Below are positions 26,101 to 50,100 of a stretch of DNA of 64,000 bases, one piece after another. A program made the position numbers and the translations under genes. Under the pieces are notes generated by a model. The model was not told where the DNA came from and searched no databases. It saw only the letters and a list, made by a program, of their open reading frames with translations. How positions within the stretch are numbered: position 1 is the first letter of the stretch; each line of letters opens with the position of its first letter. The stretch comes from Octopus sinensis. Taxonomy: Eukaryota. Where the stretch lies: contig NC_043019.1 of NCBI RefSeq assembly GCF_006345805.1, forward strand, positions 3,410,001 through 3,474,000, read 5' to 3'.

Positions 26101-29100
26101 AAACCAGGACAAATCTTTCAGCTGAGTCGTTTGACCTGCTCTCTCCACCATCATTTGCGGGGTCATTGATTCATTGCCCCTCTCCATATAAAATGTGACA
26201 TTACTCGGAAGTTCCTGAAGAATGACGGTCAGCATGGCCACAGACGACAGAGCAGGGATCCCTTTGTCTGTAGCCATTATCAAAAACCTCATGTCCCCAG
26301 AGTTATCATATCTCAAAGGATTCTTTAGATATACATCTCCAGTTTCACTAATCCCAAAATATTTTAGGTTTTTAAAATCGTCCATAGCATACTGTATCTC
26401 TGCATTGCGTTTCTGATCAAAATCTGTCGCATGAACCGTAAGGTATCGGGAGCCGACTGGATCCGTGATCTGTACAAAAATCGTGTAACTTGATTGGTTG
26501 AAAACTGGTGCATTGTCATTGACATCAGTGATGCGGATTTGAATTTCAGTCGCAGCTTGCAAACCTCCTTTGTCTGTCGCATATATTTTGATGGTCTCAA
26601 TGCTGGGCATAGCATTTCTGTCAACGTCATAATCAACGGCATAGCTTAAGATACCCGTATTGAGGTGGATGGCAAATCTCTGACTGTATTTGTTACCCGC
26701 CAATGAAAAAGTCACAGAATCATTCCTGTCTGGGTCTTGAACCTCCAGTGAAGGATCCGGTAGTAAAGTCGCAGCCTCTTGGCAGAAAGAAAATAATAGT
26801 AAAAATGAAAACAGGGAAGAATATACCAATATTAAAGAATATTAAATAGCTGGGTATGTCATACTAATTTTATGATATATTACATATCAGGGCTAAAAGA
26901 TATTGTTATATAAGATAATATATAAGATAACAGAGCTATACAATATCAATTTTATAATATACAGGGTGGCCCAAAAGTAGGTTTACAGTTAGCACGTAGG
27001 TACTTTAAATTTCTTTTAAAACATTTTATTACATTTAAATTTCTATCTTACAAACTGAAAAGGGAGCTTGACAAAATTAACTAAATTAGCATAGAATAAT
27101 TTCTTCATATCGTTTTATAATTAAGATCTAAACTGTTAATATATGAATGCGAAGGAGATAGCCACATTCCTAGTGCCCCCACCCCAAAATAAAACTTAAC
27201 CTAACGAGCCCATTATTTTATTGTTTTTGCATGAATTATCAGCCCCAAAGGATGAAAGACAAAGTTAGTTTGGGTGGAATTTGAACTCAGGACGTTAAGA
27301 TCCAGAACAAATGCCACTAGGCATTTTGTCCAACACGCTATCAATTTTGCTAGTTTTCTGCCTGACAAAATGCATAATATTAAAATACATGCAAAACTTA
27401 TCACAGAAAATCTGTTTGTACTTACAGAGCCTTCTGGAGCCGTAATGTAATAACGTGACATCAGGAAATAAGGGGCCTCGTTGATATTTTCTATGATAAT
27501 GGTAAAGTTTTCGGGAACTGAATGATTGTGGCCATCATATACAGTGATCGTTATCACATACATGTCGCAGAACTCATAATTCAACTTTTGTCCTTCTTTT
27601 AAAGTGACAGCACCACCTGGTGGAGAAGTAGAGAAAGTATTTTGACACAGGGGGAATAAATAACAGTTTTTAACAAAGACACAAAGCCACACATTTTGAG
27701 GGTGAGTGGTTTGTCAATCCCATAGACCCCCAATACATGAGTGGTGTTTTATTTATCAACTTTGAGGCATCCCCAAAGTCCATCCCCTCTTCAACATGGT
27801 GGGGACACTGGTAACAGGTAGTATCAGAGCCATGCCATTGGGAACTTCGGTTCCTGGTGGGGCCACCCAAGGTGGATTGGTCTGACACTAAGTGGTATTA
27901 GGGCCACAACCCGGCAGACGGGGCTCTGGTGAAAATCCTCGGAGTGTCTGCTTCAGCAACTGGCGGCTCCTCGGTCGTTCTGTCCCTGCGTCTGCGGACA
28001 ATCTGCGGTAACAGGATGTCTCTACATGCGGGATTATTGGGGATCGCTTGTGTAATCCACATATTCCCACGAAACTTCTTCCAAGGTGGAAGAAGCCGAC
28101 TCAACCCGCCCAGGGTGAATGTCGCCACAAGTACAAGTAAGTAGTATCAACTTTGAGAGGATAAAAGGCAAAGTTGACCTCAGAGAGATTTGAACTCAGA
28201 TTGTAAAGATGTGGAAGAAATACCAAAAGGAATTTTCTCCATTGTTTTGATGTTTGGTCATGTTCCTCAATTTTCTGAGCTTTGGCCTGCATATTGTGCT
28301 CTTCTTTCTGAGATCCAGCTGGAGCGACAGCCCATATTGGTTAGTCACATACCATATGGTCACAGCATGGAGGCACAGGGCTCAGTGGTTAGTGGTTAGT
28401 CATGGCAGACACTGGTGTCACACAAAAGGTATCCGTGCTGGCGGCACATAAAAGCACCACCAGCACCAGCACCACCACTGTCACTATCACCACCACCACC
28501 ACCACCACCACCACAGCTACAACCACCACTGTCATAACCACTAGCACCACCATTCACCACCACTATCACAACCACAACCACCACTATCGTCATCATCATC
28601 ATCATCATCATCATCTTCAATGATTTTTACGCATCAGCTTCTAAAGTGGTTTGTTACTTACTTCCAGTATCAACATGAAATGTTTCCATTCCGAAAGCCG
28701 GAGTAAAGGTGGCTACAAAGAAAGCTGGATCATTTGGGTCCGGATCGTGAAGGAGTAACGTATAGAGCAGACGTGGACTGATATTCTCTGGGACTGTTAT
28801 CAAAGCTGGAAGATTCTTCACCTTCGGGATCCGGTTCAAGTGACTGACCAAGATCCTCACTTCAGCTCGACCCACCAAGCCCTTAGTGTCTTTGGCCAGA
28901 ACCCATAAGGTGATGTAGTGGGGCATCATGGTACAGTCGTAGTTGACAGCGAAACTGAGAAGACCCGAGGTTCGGTTGATGCTGAACATTGTGGCATTGC
29001 CGTCCTTTGAACCTATGCTGTAGACGATGGCATCATCAGCATCTTCATCAAAGGCTTGCACCACGTGGCTTTCTTGAAGAACAGTCCCTGGCTGGAAAGA

Positions 29101-47100: not shown

Positions 47101-50100
47101 TGGGATGACAGTCCCTCACAGGGTTACTCATGTTTACCATCTGAGTAAACTGGAGCGATGTGAAATGAAGTGCTTTGCTCAAGAGCACAATGCATCGCCC
47201 GGTCCAGGAATCGAAACCATAATATTACGACCATGAGCCCAGAACTCTAACCACTAAGCCATGCACATCAACAAAGTGAAATATTATAGGAATGTTATCA
47301 TCATCATCATCATCATCATCATCGTTAACGTCCGTTTTCCATGCTAGCATGGGTTGGACGGTTCGATCAGGGTCTGGGAAGCCAGAAGGCTGCACCAGGC
47401 TCCAGTCTGATCTGGCACTCTTTCTACGGCTGGATGCCCTTCCTAACGCCAACCACTCCGTGAATGTAGTGGGTGCTTTTTATGTGCCACCGGCACAGGT
47501 GCCAGGTGAGGCTGGCAATGGCCACGATCGGTTGGTGCTTTTTACGTACCACCAGCACGGAAGCCAGTCAAGGCGGCGCTGGCATCGGCCACATTTGGAT
47601 GGTGCTTTTTACGTGCCACCGGCACAGGGATCACAACTACAATTTCCATTGATTTTTGATGTTGATGTACTTGATTCAATAGGTCTCCTCAAGCACAGGG
47701 TCGAAACGGTGTTTCTTTACTTGCCACCTGCACAGGAGTCAGTCCAGCGGCACTGGCAACTGCCGGGTGCCAGTCATAGGATTGGTTCAATTTCGATTCC
47801 AATTTCACTTAAATAGCAACCCCATCACCTCCACCAACTCCATCATCGTGTCTGTGTAAATATGTATGTATACATGCGTGTATAAGTGGATGCAAACCCT
47901 TTGCATTGTGGTGATTTATAACCTCTCCCACAATGCCCTCCCTGCCTTCCTGTCTAGATGCAAAATCTGTATGTTCAATAGGCTTTCTTCTTGTGTCTTT
48001 CAAAGGTCAAACAACTTGACCCCACATCTCCACTATCTGCTTGGTGAGTGATCCTGCAGTTACTTATACGATTATGCATTTCTTATGGATAGGCTAAACA
48101 TAGAGAGAACAAACAAAGACAGACAAAGGGATTAAGTCGATTACATTGACCCCAGTGCGTAACTGAACCTTTTTTAATCGACCCCAAAAGGATGAAAAGC
48201 AAAGTCAACCGTGGCGGAATTTGAACTCAGAACGTAATGGAAGATGAAATTCCGCTAAGCATTTCGACCGGCATGCAAATGATTCTGCCAATTGCCACCT
48301 TAATGTAGATCATCATCATCATCATCATCATCGTTTAACGTCTGCTTTTCATGCTAGCATGGGTTGGACGATTTGACTGAGGACTAGCGAACCAGATGGC
48401 TGCACCAGGCTCCAGTCTGATCTGGCAGAGTTTCTACAGCTGGATGCCCTTCCCAATGCCAACCACTCTGAGAGTGTAGTGGGTGCTTTTATGTGCCACC
48501 GGCATGAGGGCCAGTCAGGCGGTACTGGCAACGGCCGCGCTCAAATGGTGCTTTTTACGTGTCACCTGCACAGTAGCCGGTCCAGCGGCACTGGCAACAA
48601 CCTCGCTTGAATGTTTTTTTCACATACCACCGGCACAGGTGCAAGTAAGGCGACGCTGGTAATGATCATGCTCGAATGGTGCTTATTTCATGCCAGCGAC
48701 ACGGAAGCCAGTTAGCTGCTCTGGCAACGATCATACTCAGATGGTGCTCTTAGTGCTCCACTTGCACGGATGCCAGTCATCGAATTTGATTTCAATCTCA
48801 CTTGCCTCAACAGGTCTTCACAAGCAGAGTTTAGTGTCCAATGAAGGAAAGGTATGCATAAGTGGACTGGTTACACCCCTGGCATAGGCCATGAGGTTAT
48901 GGTCTCGCTTGGCTTGCCGGGTCTTCTCAAGCACAGCATATTTCCAAAGGTCTCGGTCACTAGTCATTGCCTCCGTGAGGACTAATATTTAAAGGTCATG
49001 CTTCACCACCTCATCCCAGGTCTTCCTGGGCCTACCTTTTCCACAGGTTCCTGTGGATATTATATTAAAACACAAAATACTAGTGCAGTATTCTTGTTAT
49101 AAAACATAAACTTGTGACACGGCAGGGCATGAACACCCTATCAAATGATTTCCACTTTTATTTTTCAATCTCAACAATTTATACCTAATTTTAAAACAAA
49201 GATCTTAGAAGAAGGACCAACCAAAATAATCTTACCGAATTCTCATATACAGAAAGTGAATAGTTAGTTGAGGAGAACTGGGGTGGTTCGTTGATGTCGA
49301 CCACTTTGATACAAAGTTTTACTGGGTTCGATTCTGATATACCATCATTGGCCCAAGCTGTAACATTGAAATCACGAGATGACATACTCTCGAAATCCAG
49401 CTTAGAACTCACTGTTATTTCTCCAGCTACAAATAAAAGGGAAAGGAAATGTATTTATTATTTTAATACAAAAAGAAATACACACACACACACACACACA
49501 CAAGGCAACACACTTTGGAGTTGTAAGTGTTTAACTCTTTAGTGTTTAAACTGGCCAAATCCGGCCCAATATATTCTACATGTTTTATATTTAAACTGGC
49601 CATATCTAGCCTCTTACACCTAACCTACATTGACAGTCTAAAAATAAACAATCACACCACTGAAACCTCAAAGCTGTAAGATAATGCAGGATTAATTCAA
49701 AACAATTTAAATAAAAAAGCTTAGGCGCAGGAGTGGCTGTGTGGTAAGTAGCTTGTTTACCAACCACATGGTTCCGGGTTCACTCCCACTGCGTGGCACC
49801 GTGAGCAAGTGTCTTCTGCTATAGCCTCGGGCCGACCAAAGCCTTGTGAGTGGATGTAGTAGACGGAAACTGAAAGAAGCCCGTCGTATATATGTATATA
49901 TGTATGTGTATGTTTGTGTGTCTGTGTTTGTCCCCCTAGCATTGCTTCACAACCGATGCTGGCGTGTTTGTGTCCCCGTCACTTAGCGGTTCGGCAAAAG
50001 AGACCGATAGAATAAGTACTGGGCTTACAAAGAATAAGTCCCGGGGTCGAGTTCCTCGATTAAAAGGCGGTGCTCCAGCATGGCCACAGTCAAATGACTG

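What the first reader, a model, noticed from the sequence alone, without database searches (positions are those of the whole stretch)
27426..49426. Ectodomain built from a five-fold tandem two-EC module with strictly alternating Ca2+-competent and Ca2+-degenerate linkers
Seen: exon pairs of ~430 nt (phase 0-1) plus ~194 nt (phase 1-0) repeat five times. B-to-A linkers keep acidic Ca2+ ligands (DINEPP, DVNEAP, DSNEPP, DVNEAP, DVNEAP, NINEAP, with LDFE/LDYE/LNYE). All five A-to-B linkers lose them (PLNWKP, SLNKAP, AMNRVP, SINNAP, HLNRIP, with VDYD/LDYN/VNYS/IDYN/VNYD lacking the DRE glutamate). Known: canonical EC junctions bind three Ca2+ via xE, DRE, DxNDN, DxD and xDx, and Ca2+-poor linkers create bends or hinges in Fat, Dachsous, PCDH15 and Drosophila N-cadherin. 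Inference: rigid EC pairs joined by periodic hinges, giving a zig-zag or spring-like ectodomain, possibly mechanosensory or for a defined intermembrane spacing. The pattern persisted despite strong sequence divergence between modules, which suggests selection.
Basis: partly seen in the sequence, partly recalled or inferred. Interest (0 to 1): 0.8.

Follow-up and report, generated by a model that had tools for sequence, protein, structure and literature searches.

The report
Mollusc cadherin with alternating calcium linkers
This octopus gene encodes a long cell-surface cadherin built from a two-domain unit repeated five times, in which fully equipped calcium-binding joints strictly alternate with joints that lack one key acidic residue, a pattern shared with a limpet and a clam but probably meaning 'partly calcium-bound' rather than 'calcium-free hinge'.

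Summary
On the minus strand, exon pairs of 427-433 nt and 191-197 nt repeat five times with canonical splice sites. The 22-exon chain reproduces Octopus sinensis 'cadherin-23-like' (1908 aa, 16 ECs) exactly.

The pairs encode two EC types, A and B, in strict alternation over EC4-EC15. The alternation also holds in two other cephalopods, in Patella vulgata (all 20 ECs) and in Solemya velum (about 29 ECs, same exon pair). None of about 260 other cadherins screened shows it at comparable scores.

The interpretation needs correcting. Over 32 A-to-B linkers, the fourth linker position is never acidic. However, the linker Asn (32/32), xEx Glu (31/32), xDx Asp (32/32) and DxD (mostly) are kept, and Asp sits at the DRE third position in 17/32. 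These joints therefore look like partial Ca2+ linkers, as in PCDH15 EC3-4 and EC5-6, with site 3 and perhaps site 2 occupied. They do not look Ca2+-free.

AlphaFold models of an A-B and a B-A pair are both confident and equally extended, so they give no support for a static zig-zag. Periodic softer joints remain plausible but untested. The gene is not a CDH23 orthologue. I found no paper describing the periodic pattern.

The parts
62696..62844 (-). Exon: C-terminal part of EC1. The gene's 5' end, with an N-terminal non-cadherin domain, lies beyond window position 64000.
   Evidence: The exon chain reproduces P0001 exactly; tblastn.
61571..61751 (-). Exon, EC1/EC2 region. Includes the long EC1-EC2 linker, which has no Ca2+ motif.
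60137..60298 (-). Exon: end of EC2 through the non-canonical EC2-EC3 linker VKNNAP...NLP.
54314..54451 (-). Exon: first part of EC3 (B-like).
52343..52465 (-). Exon: rest of EC3.
51713..51889 (-). Exon: EC3-EC4 linker (TDLNNPP) and first part of EC4 (B type).
49236..49426 (-). B0 exon, 191 nt, phase 1 to 0. Encodes the end of EC4 (LDFE), the B-to-A linker DINEPP and the first strand of EC5 with its xEx Glu.
46101..46533 (-). A1 exon, 433 nt, phase 0 to 1. Encodes the rest of EC5 (A type, VDYD), the A-to-B linker PLNWKP and the first two thirds of EC6 (B type, PEN, DAD).
44129..44322 (-). B1 exon, 194 nt. Encodes the end of EC6 (LDFE), the linker DVNEAP and the start of EC7.
42593..43022 (-). 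A2 exon, 430 nt. Encodes EC7 (A, LDYN), the linker SLNKAP and the start of EC8 (B).
41131..41321 (-). B2 exon, 191 nt. Encodes the end of EC8 (LDYE), the linker DSNEPP and the start of EC9.
39597..40023 (-). A3 exon, 427 nt. Encodes EC9 (A, VNYS), the linker AMNRVP and the start of EC10 (B).
37740..37936 (-). B3 exon, 197 nt. Encodes the end of EC10 (LNYE), the linker DVNEAP and the start of EC11.
35001..35158 (-). A4a exon, 158 nt. First part of the fourth A exon (EC11, IDYN), cut off by an extra phase-2 intron.
31333..31604 (-). A4b exon, 272 nt. Encodes the rest of EC11, the linker SINNAP and the start of EC12 (B). 158 + 272 = 430 nt.
30181..30377 (-). B4 exon, 197 nt. Encodes the end of EC12 (LDYE), the linker DVNEAP and the start of EC13.
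28662..29091 (-). A5 exon, 430 nt. Encodes EC13 (A, VNYD), the linker HLNRIP and the start of EC14 (B).
27426..27616 (-). B5 exon, 191 nt. Encodes the end of EC14 (LNYE), the linker NINEAP and the start of EC15.
25949..26775 (-). Large exon. Encodes the rest of EC15 (A-like, VDYD), the only fully canonical linker DVNDNAP, the divergent EC16, a short stalk, the transmembrane helix ([23 protein letters not shown]) and the start of the cytoplasmic tail.
22767..22874 (-). Cytoplasmic tail exon.
22080..22138 (-). Cytoplasmic tail exon.
19959..20182 (-). Last coding exon. The tail ends ...[10 protein letters not shown] followed by the stop codon. The tail has no Pfam match.

Best explanation
The window holds most of an atypical single-pass cadherin gene of Octopus sinensis. 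It belongs to a family found so far in cephalopods, a gastropod and a bivalve.

Architecture:
- An N-terminal non-cadherin domain, encoded upstream of the window.
- Four divergent B-like ECs.
- Five A-B two-EC modules.
- An A-like EC15, a divergent EC16, one transmembrane helix and a tail of about 190 aa.
- Each module is encoded by an exon pair that is out of register with the domains. The module was multiplied by tandem duplication of that pair before the molluscan classes split.

B-to-A junctions carry every ligand of a three-Ca2+ cadherin linker: xEx Glu, D-x-E, D/N-x-N-E-x-P, DxD and xDx.

A-to-B junctions always lack the acidic residue at linker position 4, and usually position 1. In classical cadherins that residue bridges sites 1 and 2. 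These junctions keep all ligands of site 3 and most of site 2.

Most likely mechanism: B-A pairs are stiff rods of about 9 nm held by three Ca2+. A-B junctions hold only one or two Ca2+ (site 3, sometimes site 2) and are more compliant. The ectodomain would then be a chain of rigid two-EC segments with regularly spaced softer joints.

Shown: the gene model, the two EC types, the ligand pattern, its conservation, and the cadherin fold of both types.

Inferred: Ca2+ stoichiometry (by analogy with PCDH15 EC3-4 and EC5-6), the mechanical consequence, and any biological role.
For: - Gene model and identity with P0001.
- Pfam Cadherin PF00028, E = 5e-90, 10 stretches.
- Two EC types, with 143-159 bits for own type against 8-25 bits for the other; strict ABAB in octopus EC4-15, in two more cephalopods and in all 20 Patella ECs.
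- Absent from 115 other cadherin hits. Absent from 146 of 147 top representatives.
- The exception is Solemya velum KAL5014827.1, with the same N-terminal domain and about 29 ECs in ABAB order.
- The same exon pair at homologous positions in Solemya (435/441 nt and 189/195 nt).
- Ligand counts. A-to-B, n=32: position 4 acidic 0 (Q13 K6 R6 N3 W2 Y1 H1); linker Asn 32; xEx Glu 31; xDx Asp 32; DxD first D 29; DxD second D/E 26. B-to-A, n=35: position 4 Glu 35; xEx Glu 35; DRE Glu 33.
- Invariant columns in 22 aligned A-B pairs include E15, N102, D134, D136 and D190.
- Precedent from crystal structures (PMC7547225). PCDH15 EC3-4, native DxNNQ, binds two Ca2+ at sites 2 and 3, with weaker affinity, and is flexible. 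PCDH15 EC5-6, PPNNQ with no DRE but site-3 motifs intact, binds one Ca2+ at site 3 and was seen in three orientations.
- Both EC types fold as cadherin domains in AlphaFold2 (pLDDT 92.7 and 94.0). Their best PDB matches are cadherin EC pairs.
Against: - No Ca2+ binding, structure or mechanics was measured.
- AlphaFold2 gives the A-B pair an extended arrangement as confident as the B-A pair: pTM 0.67 against 0.73, and linker pLDDT about 91 against about 94-98.
- The two models have the same TM-scores to straight templates (3mvs 0.64 against 0.68) and to bent ones (5kj4 0.42 against 0.44). The models therefore show no difference in geometry.
- AlphaFold2 does not model ions or flexibility, so this is weak evidence either way.
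- All linkers here are one residue shorter than DxNDNxP (DxNE-xP). Even the three-Ca2+ status of B-to-A junctions is therefore an inference.
- From my own knowledge: marine mollusc body fluids hold about 10 mM Ca2+. Weak sites might be filled anyway.
- The family's tissue, partners and function are unknown.
Confidence: 0.6

Rival explanations
1. The A-to-B junctions are stiff and straight despite the missing acidic residue. The Gln, Lys or Arg that occupies linker position 4 in 25 of 32 cases, together with the conserved P-x-x-x-N-L-P stretch, replaces Ca2+ at sites 1 and 2 by hydrogen bonds or salt bridges to the retained xEx Glu and D-Y-D. Alternatively it forms a conserved protein-protein interface. 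On this reading the alternation marks a two-EC structural or binding unit, not a hinge.
For: - The xEx Glu of A domains is kept in 31/32 although its usual partners are gone. Position 4 is Q, K or R in 25/32.
- P105 and P111 are invariant in 22 A-B pairs.
- AlphaFold2 places A and B in a confident extended arrangement that cannot be told apart from the canonical pair by template TM-scores.
Against: - Position 4 is also W, N, Y or H in 7/32 linkers. These residues cannot mimic a cation.
- Solved linkers with the same defect are flexible (PCDH15 EC3-4 and EC5-6; PMC7547225).
- No coordinates were available to check whether K, R or Q points into the acidic pocket.
Confidence: 0.25
2. One reading: the A-to-B linkers are Ca2+-free hinges that give the ectodomain a zig-zag or spring shape.
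For: - Position 4, and in cephalopods position 1, of the linker are never acidic. The DRE Glu is absent in 30/32.
- Ca2+-free linkers are known to bend (DN-cadherin EC2-3, PCDH15 EC9-10; PMC8325961, PMC5120219).
Against: - The full site-3 ligand set and the xEx Glu are invariant or nearly so over three molluscan classes. That is hard to explain if no ion binds.
- 17/32 linkers have Asp at the third DRE position, which is a canonical alternative.
- The A-B model matches bent Ca2+-free pairs poorly (5kj4 TMq 0.42, rmsd 13.5 A; 3ubf 0.47, rmsd 16.9 A). These values are no better than for the B-A model.
Confidence: 0.08
3. The alternation has no function of its own. A founding two-EC unit happened to have one defective linker, and tandem duplication simply copied it.
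For: The modules are clear duplicates with conserved exon lengths and phases. Solemya shows recent further duplications of four-EC blocks.
Against: - Modules have diverged to 28-37% identity, yet 0/32 A-to-B linkers regained, and 0/35 B-to-A linkers lost, the acidic position 4.
- The pattern survived in lineages separated since the early Palaeozoic (my own knowledge of mollusc phylogeny).
- Neutral drift would have blurred the pattern.
Confidence: 0.07

Closest known systems
Protocadherin-15 partial Ca2+ linkers (EC3-4, EC5-6)
   Same: The sequence defect is of the same kind. The acidic residue at DxN-D-N position 4 is replaced (PCDH15 EC3-4 DxNNQ; EC5-6 PPNNQ), while the linker Asn, DxD and xDx (site 3) are kept. 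Crystal structures show two and one bound Ca2+ respectively, with several inter-domain orientations (PMC7547225). The octopus linkers PLNWK, SLNKA, AMNRV, SINNA and HLNRI resemble PPNNQ. The Patella DxNQxP linkers resemble DxNNQ.
   Different: - PCDH15 has single, irregularly placed atypical linkers among 11 ECs plus a membrane-adjacent MAD12 domain. Here the atypical linker recurs at every second junction, and there is no room for a MAD12 domain (about 45 aa between EC16 and the membrane).
- Sequence identity to solved PCDH15 fragments is only about 20-27%.
Cadherin-23 (the name NCBI gives this gene: 'cadherin-23-like')
   Same: A long non-classical cadherin. CDH23 fragments are among the best sequence and fold matches (5w4t E = 4e-19; 5vh2 CDH23 EC12-13 is the top Foldseek hit for the A-B pair). 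CDH23 EC3 also starts with an ...FTNLP... stretch (alignment).
   Different: - 16 ECs rather than 27.
- An N-terminal non-cadherin domain.
- The tail ends ...NAWLNC.
- Identity to CDH23 (22-26%) is no higher than to CELSR1 or protocadherins. CELSR1 is in fact the best sequence hit.
- The A/B HMMs find no alternation in proteins named cadherin-23 from other animals (P0040, P0108).
- The name is an automatic label, not orthology.
Fat / Dachsous and DN-cadherin with Ca2+-free or partial linkers
   Same: Giant or long cadherins in which some linkers lack Ca2+ ligands and bend (PMC8325961, citing Jin 2012 and Tsukasaki 2014).
   Different: In those proteins the atypical linkers are sporadic. Fat4-, Dachsous- and protocadherin-16-like hits show no A/B periodicity. 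The octopus protein has no EGF or laminin-G domains (Pfam).
LI-cadherin (CDH17, 7D-cadherin)
   Same: Arose by duplication of a two-EC unit and has a Ca2+-free linker between EC2 and EC3 (PMC8427231, listed).
   Different: It has one duplication and one atypical linker, not a periodic array. It is a vertebrate classical-type cadherin.
Bacterial cadherin-like repeat proteins with DVNEAP linkers
   Same: They share the shortened D-V-N-E-A-P linker form and reach 27-31% identity (P0015, P0034; P0122).
   Different: Their repeats are uniform with no A/B alternation. They carry RTX-type or VCBS contexts and no eukaryotic gene structure.

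Membership tests
Cadherin superfamily | Tandem extracellular cadherin (EC) repeats of about 105 aa with a beta-sandwich fold | tested here: met
   - Pfam PF00028, E = 5e-90, 10 stretches.
- 16 EC-sized domains by HMM.
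- AlphaFold2 pLDDT of 93-94 with all-beta domains.
- Top PDB fold matches are all cadherin EC pairs.
Cadherin superfamily | Inter-repeat Ca2+-binding motifs (xEx, DxD, DRE, xDx, DxNDN) | tested here: met
   Complete sets at all six B-to-A junctions and at EC15-16 (DVNDNAP). Partial sets at the A-to-B junctions. Actual Ca2+ binding was not measured.
Cadherin superfamily | Membrane anchoring (single-pass type I) | tested here: met
   A 23-residue hydrophobic segment, [23 protein letters not shown], lies after EC16 and is followed by a basic stretch. The signal peptide was seen only in the relative P0003. The octopus 5' end lies outside the window.
Cadherin-23 (CDH23) orthologue | 27 EC repeats | tested here: not met
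   16 ECs.
Cadherin-23 (CDH23) orthologue | Closer in sequence to CDH23 than to other cadherin families | tested here: not met
   The best solved-structure hit is CELSR1 (E = 1e-33). CDH23, protocadherins and classical cadherins all fall at about 20-27% identity.
Cadherin-23 (CDH23) orthologue | EC1 at the very N-terminus forming the handshake with PCDH15; C-terminal PDZ-binding motif | tested here: not met
   Relatives carry a non-cadherin domain of about 170 aa in front of EC1. The tail ends NAWLNC. Binding to PCDH15 cannot be tested with these tools.
Protocadherin-15 orthologue | 11 ECs followed by a membrane-adjacent MAD12 domain | tested here: not met
   16 ECs, with only about 45 residues between EC16 and the membrane. 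Pfam finds nothing other than cadherin-type domains.
Fat / Fat-like cadherins | About 34 ECs followed by EGF and laminin-G domains | tested here: not met
   No EGF or LamG domain in Pfam. 16 ECs.
Partial Ca2+-free linker class (Jin 2012; Powers 2017; PCDH15 EC3-4 and EC5-6) | The linker lacks some of the site-1/2 ligands (DRE Glu and/or acidic residues of DxNDN) but keeps the site-3 ligands (linker Asn, DxD, xDx) | tested here: met
   Over 32 A-to-B linkers: position 4 acidic 0; Asn 32; xDx 32; DxD 29 and 26. Definition and precedents are from PMC7547225 and PMC8325961.
Partial Ca2+-free linker class | Reduced Ca2+ occupancy (one or two ions) and increased inter-domain flexibility | not testable with these tools
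   This needs a structure, ITC, SAXS or MD. AlphaFold2 models carry no ions and show no geometric difference.
Molluscan A/B-alternating cadherin family (defined here) | Strict alternation of A-type and B-type ECs, with Glu at linker position 4 only after B-type ECs | tested here: met
   Seen in Octopus, Argonauta, an unnamed cephalopod transcript, Patella and Solemya.
Molluscan A/B-alternating cadherin family (defined here) | Module encoded by an exon pair of about 430 nt plus about 194 nt, out of register with the domains | tested here: met
   Octopus and Solemya velum locus L001. The Patella locus could not be fetched.

The most novel reading that the evidence does not exclude
Molluscs possess a previously undescribed cadherin family whose ectodomain is a true periodic copolymer of two EC types. 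Stiff three-Ca2+ joints and compliant one- or two-Ca2+ joints alternate along its whole length (5 modules in cephalopods, 10 in a limpet, 12 or more in a protobranch clam). The two-EC period has been selected for at least half a billion years because it sets a mechanical or assembly property. Examples would be a segmented spring in a ciliary or microvillar link, or a register for antiparallel zippering. This would make it a natural test bed for how linker Ca2+ occupancy tunes cadherin elasticity.
Probability: 0.25. Interest if true: 0.7.

Novelty: new variant of a known kind. Interest (0 to 1): 0.5.

Why it matters
Partial and Ca2+-free linkers are thought to set the elasticity and shape of long cadherins such as tip-link proteins, Fat and Dachsous. 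In all studied cases they are scattered, so their individual contribution is hard to isolate.

A protein in which the same atypical junction recurs at every second position would be different. It has natural variants of different length, and the key difference is a single residue (Glu against Gln, Lys or Arg at linker position 4). That would give a clean system for measuring how linker Ca2+ occupancy translates into stiffness.

The finding also shows that the database name 'cadherin-23-like' is misleading for this gene. It defines a mollusc-wide family with an unannotated N-terminal domain.

Tried and rejected
- CDH23 orthology: rejected on EC number, N-terminal domain, tail and equal similarity to other families.
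- Static bend at A-B junctions: AlphaFold2 plus Foldseek gave the same extended geometry for A-B and B-A pairs. The tools return no coordinates, so I could not measure angles or see where the position-4 side chain points.
- Wider taxonomic reach:
  - A profile of the A exons against 1.8 billion representatives returned mostly giant generic cadherins. The only new member was Solemya.
  - A profile search with the A-B pair returned only short unnamed fragments.
  - Presence outside molluscs remains unknown.
- P0183, P0141 and P0224 show alternating A/B calls but at low scores (means of about 23-30 bits). They have their own, different repeat units and canonical DxNDN linkers, so I rejected them as family members.
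- N-terminal domain: no Pfam match. A profile search found nine short unnamed proteins.
- The Patella gene locus was not on record.
- Literature searches for an alternating or periodic linker pattern, or for this gene in cephalopods or molluscs, found nothing relevant. The library holds open-access papers only.

Full report
WHAT IS THERE

The region lies inside a multi-exon gene on the minus strand of an animal genome (about 30-48% G+C, introns full of microsatellites and SINE-like repeats).

I located acceptor and donor sites for every cadherin-like reading frame and joined them. All junctions are AG/GT.

- Six 'B' exons measure 191, 194, 191, 197, 197 and 191 nt (phase 1 to 0).
- Five 'A' exons measure 433, 430, 427, 430 and 430 nt (phase 0 to 1).
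- The fourth A exon is cut in two (158 + 272 nt) by an additional phase-2 intron.
- The finding's end coordinates, 49426 and 27426, are the first base of the first B exon and the last base of the last one.

A protein search found a 100% match, 'cadherin-23-like [Octopus sinensis]', 1908 aa (P0001). A 22-exon chain between window positions 62844 and 19959 reproduces residues 91-1908 of that protein exactly. The gene's 5' end lies beyond the window.

ANATOMY OF THE PROTEIN

Pfam sees only cadherin-type domains (PF00028, E = 5e-90). An HMM built from the repeats finds 16 EC domains. They are followed by a stalk of about 45 aa, one hydrophobic transmembrane segment and a tail of about 190 aa with no Pfam match.

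The five modules are 207-209 aa and align almost without gaps, yet they share only 28-37% identity. Each module holds two kinds of EC. A-type ECs are 32% identical to one another, B-type ECs 34%, and A to B only 20%.

The exon pair is out of register with the domains.
- The B exon carries the last third of a B-type EC, the B-to-A linker and the first strand of the next A-type EC.
- The A exon carries the rest of the A-type EC, the A-to-B linker and two thirds of the next B-type EC.

EC1-EC4 are divergent and B-like. EC5-EC14 are the five A-B modules. EC15 is A-like and is joined to a divergent EC16 by the protein's only fully canonical linker, DVNDNAP.

THE LINKER PATTERN

I aligned all A-type and all B-type ECs and read out the nine canonical ligand positions for every junction.

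In octopus, the six B-to-A junctions have every ligand: xEx Glu, D/N-x-E, D/N-x-N-E, DxD and xDx.

The five A-to-B junctions lack an acidic residue at linker positions 1 and 4 (PLNW, SLNK, AMNR, SINN, HLNR). At the third DRE position they have D, N, S, N and D.

All five nevertheless keep the xEx Glu of the A domain, the linker Asn, both Asp of DxD and the xDx Asp of the B domain.

All linkers in this protein are one residue shorter than DxNDNxP. HMMER aligns DVNE-AP to DVNDNDP of CELSR1.

CONSERVATION

HMMs made only from the ten octopus ECs classify the following in perfect ABAB order:
- the ECs of Argonauta hians (P0002, 69% identity);
- an unnamed cephalopod transcript (P0003, 53%);
- all 20 ECs of Patella vulgata 'cadherin-23 isoform X2' (P0004, 29%).

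None of the other 115 cadherin hits does so. These include Fat4-like, Dachsous/protocadherin-16-like, CDH23-like, PCDH15, clustered protocadherins and bacterial cadherin-like proteins.

A profile of the A exons searched against 1.8 billion representative proteins added one more member. This is Solemya velum KAL5014827.1, 3565 aa, with about 29 ECs in ABAB order, the same penultimate DVNDNAP linker and the same N-terminal domain.

Its genomic locus (L001) has the same exon pair. Pieces of 435/441 nt alternate with pieces of 189/195 nt, and the boundaries fall at the homologous residues. The module and its exon structure therefore predate the split of bivalves, gastropods and cephalopods.

Counts over all five species:

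| Position | A-to-B (n=32) | B-to-A (n=35) |
|---|---|---|
| Linker position 4 | acidic 0/32 (Q13, K6, R6, N3, W2, Y1, H1) | Glu 35/35 |
| Linker Asn (position 3) | 32/32 | 28/35 |
| xEx Glu | 31/32 | 35/35 |
| xDx Asp | 32/32 | 35/35 |
| DxD, first | Asp 29/32 | acidic 35/35 |
| DxD, second | D/E 26/32 | acidic 35/35 |
| DRE third position | Glu 2, Asp 17, other 13 | Glu 33/35 |

In an alignment of 22 A-B pairs the invariant columns include E15, N102, D134, D136 and D190. These are the xEx Glu and the whole site-3 set.

WHAT THE PATTERN MEANS

The alternation is real and selected, but 'Ca2+-degenerate' overstates it. Three points bear on this.

- The canonical motif is written XEX-DXD-D(R/Y)(D/E)-XDX-DXNDN (PMC7547225). 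D-Y-D, found in two octopus A domains, is therefore not a defect.
- The one universal defect is the acidic residue at linker position 4. In classical cadherins it bridges sites 1 and 2 (my own knowledge of E- and N-cadherin structures).
- The same paper describes two solved linkers with this kind of defect.
  - PCDH15 EC3-4 has a native motif that needs N369D/Q370N to become DXNDN. It binds two Ca2+ (sites 2 and 3) with weaker affinity and is flexible.
  - PCDH15 EC5-6 (PPNNQ, no DRE, site-3 motifs intact) binds one Ca2+ at site 3 and was seen in three orientations.

The Patella and Solemya linkers (D/N-x-N-Q) resemble the first of these. The cephalopod linkers (x-x-N-W/K/R/N) resemble the second.

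The best reading is therefore that three-Ca2+ junctions alternate with one- or two-Ca2+ junctions. This is the class called 'partial Ca2+-free linkers' (PMC8325961).

STRUCTURE PREDICTION

AlphaFold2 was run with family alignments of 22 and 25 rows. It gave high-confidence models for an A-B pair (EC5-6, pLDDT 92.7, pTM 0.67) and a B-A pair (EC6-7, pLDDT 94.0, pTM 0.73). Both ECs of each pair are all-beta cadherin folds.

Foldseek against the PDB returns cadherin EC pairs for both models, with nearly the same scores:

| Template | A-B model | B-A model |
|---|---|---|
| CDH23 EC1-2, straight (3mvs) | TMq 0.64 | TMq 0.68 |
| CDH23 EC1-2 D124G mutant, straight (2wd0) | TMq 0.65 | TMq 0.67 |
| PCDH15 EC9-10, bent, Ca2+-free (5kj4) | TMq 0.42 | TMq 0.44 |
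| DN-cadherin EC1-3 (3ubf) | TMq 0.47 | TMq 0.44 |

The models therefore do not predict a fixed bend at A-B junctions, and a static zig-zag is not supported.

The models contain no ions and say nothing about dynamics. No coordinates are returned, so I could not check whether Lys, Arg or Gln at position 4 fills the acidic pocket. The slightly lower pTM and linker pLDDT of the A-B pair are too small to interpret.

MECHANISM AND RIVALS

Most likely (about 0.6): rigid B-A rods are joined by softer, partly occupied A-B joints, giving a regularly segmented chain.

Main rival (about 0.25): the A-B joint is just as stiff. Gln, Lys or Arg at position 4 and the conserved P-x-x-x-N-L-P stretch would replace the lost ions or build an interface. 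The near-invariance of the A-domain xEx Glu fits either idea.

Less likely: truly Ca2+-free hinges (about 0.08) and a frozen accident of duplication (about 0.07). Both are disfavoured by the conservation data.

Biological role is open. No expression or functional data were found. The mechanosensory and spacing ideas remain speculation.

COMPARISON WITH KNOWN FAMILIES

The protein is a cadherin-superfamily member. It fails the tests for several named families.

- CDH23: it has 16 ECs rather than 27, an N-terminal non-cadherin domain and a different tail, and it is no more similar to CDH23 than to CELSR1 or protocadherins.
- PCDH15: there is no MAD12 domain.
- Fat: there are no EGF or LamG domains.

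What it works like is the set of partial-linker junctions of PCDH15. What is different from every case I could find is the strict periodicity. My literature searches found no description of such an alternation, but the library holds open-access papers only.

I rate it a new variant of a known kind, of moderate interest.

Noticed in passing
outside the window (upstream of 64000); seen in P0003 residues ~60-200, P0005, P0121 residues ~37-185; P0001 starts inside it: Family members carry a non-cadherin domain of about 170 aa in front of EC1. Its invariant motifs are Y-L, C-C-G-x-I-x-x-W-E, Q-V-W-R-P, D-V-x-G-W and D-R-x-Y. It has no Pfam match, and a profile search returned only nine short unnamed proteins. 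The NCBI octopus model P0001 begins in the middle of this domain, so it is probably truncated at the N-terminus.
   Followed up: partly
window 35001-31604 (-): Only the fourth A exon is interrupted by an extra phase-2 intron of 3.4 kb, within ...DYNV(R)|LHPS... The homologous A exons I could map in Solemya are unsplit. This looks like a lineage-specific intron gain inside one copy of a duplicated exon.
   Followed up: partly
window 62844-49236 (-), EC1-EC4: The four N-terminal ECs all score as B-like and are joined by non-canonical linkers.
- EC1-2 has a spacer of about 12 residues with no acidic motif ([22 protein letters not shown]).
- EC2-3 is VKNNAP.
- EC3-4 is TDLNNPP.
- EC1 and EC3 also lack the xEx Glu (PRN, AKD).
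This tip region may be the most flexible or most specialised part of the protein.
   Followed up: no
window 26775-25949 (-): The EC15-EC16 junction is the only one with the full-length canonical DVNDNAP motif. It is conserved as such in Argonauta, the third cephalopod and Solemya. It follows an A-type EC with VDYD, which shows that D-Y-D is compatible with a canonical linker in this family.
   Followed up: partly
L001 (Solemya velum), about 35000-52000; P0121 residues ~900-2260: The Solemya gene contains near-identical four-EC (A-B-A-B) blocks repeated three to four times. The linker strings KPALLNLPHR, SPVFAAATYY, KPTLLNLPQK and SPVFSSPAYH recur. This indicates recent higher-order tandem duplication on top of the ancient two-EC module, or possibly an assembly artefact.
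   Followed up: no
P0122, P0224, P0015, P0034 (bacterial proteins): Bacterial cadherin-like repeat proteins use the same shortened DVNEAP linker. They reach 27-31% identity to the octopus protein, as high as animal Fat or Dachsous. Their repeats are uniform, with no A/B alternation.
   Followed up: partly
window 44128-43970 (-), directly after the B1 donor: The intron begins with a long CAT/CAC-rich run that reads as poly-His in frame with the exon ([17 protein letters not shown]...). It is not part of the annotated product. Read-through would add a His-rich tail before a stop.
   Followed up: no
window, many places on both strands, e.g. 61313-61480, 53924-54073, 49939-50124, 45007-45249, 2920-3192: A dispersed repeat of about 200-300 nt occurs many times in the introns and flanks. 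Its translation reads ...[22 protein letters not shown]... It is often next to (TA)n or (TATG)n microsatellites and is presumably a SINE-like element.
   Followed up: no
window 38714-39166 (-) and 13060-13362 (-): Open reading frames resemble the C-terminal parts of retrotransposon (LINE-type) proteins. One sits in the intron between exons A3 and B3 and the other downstream of the gene. I did not analyse them.
   Followed up: no
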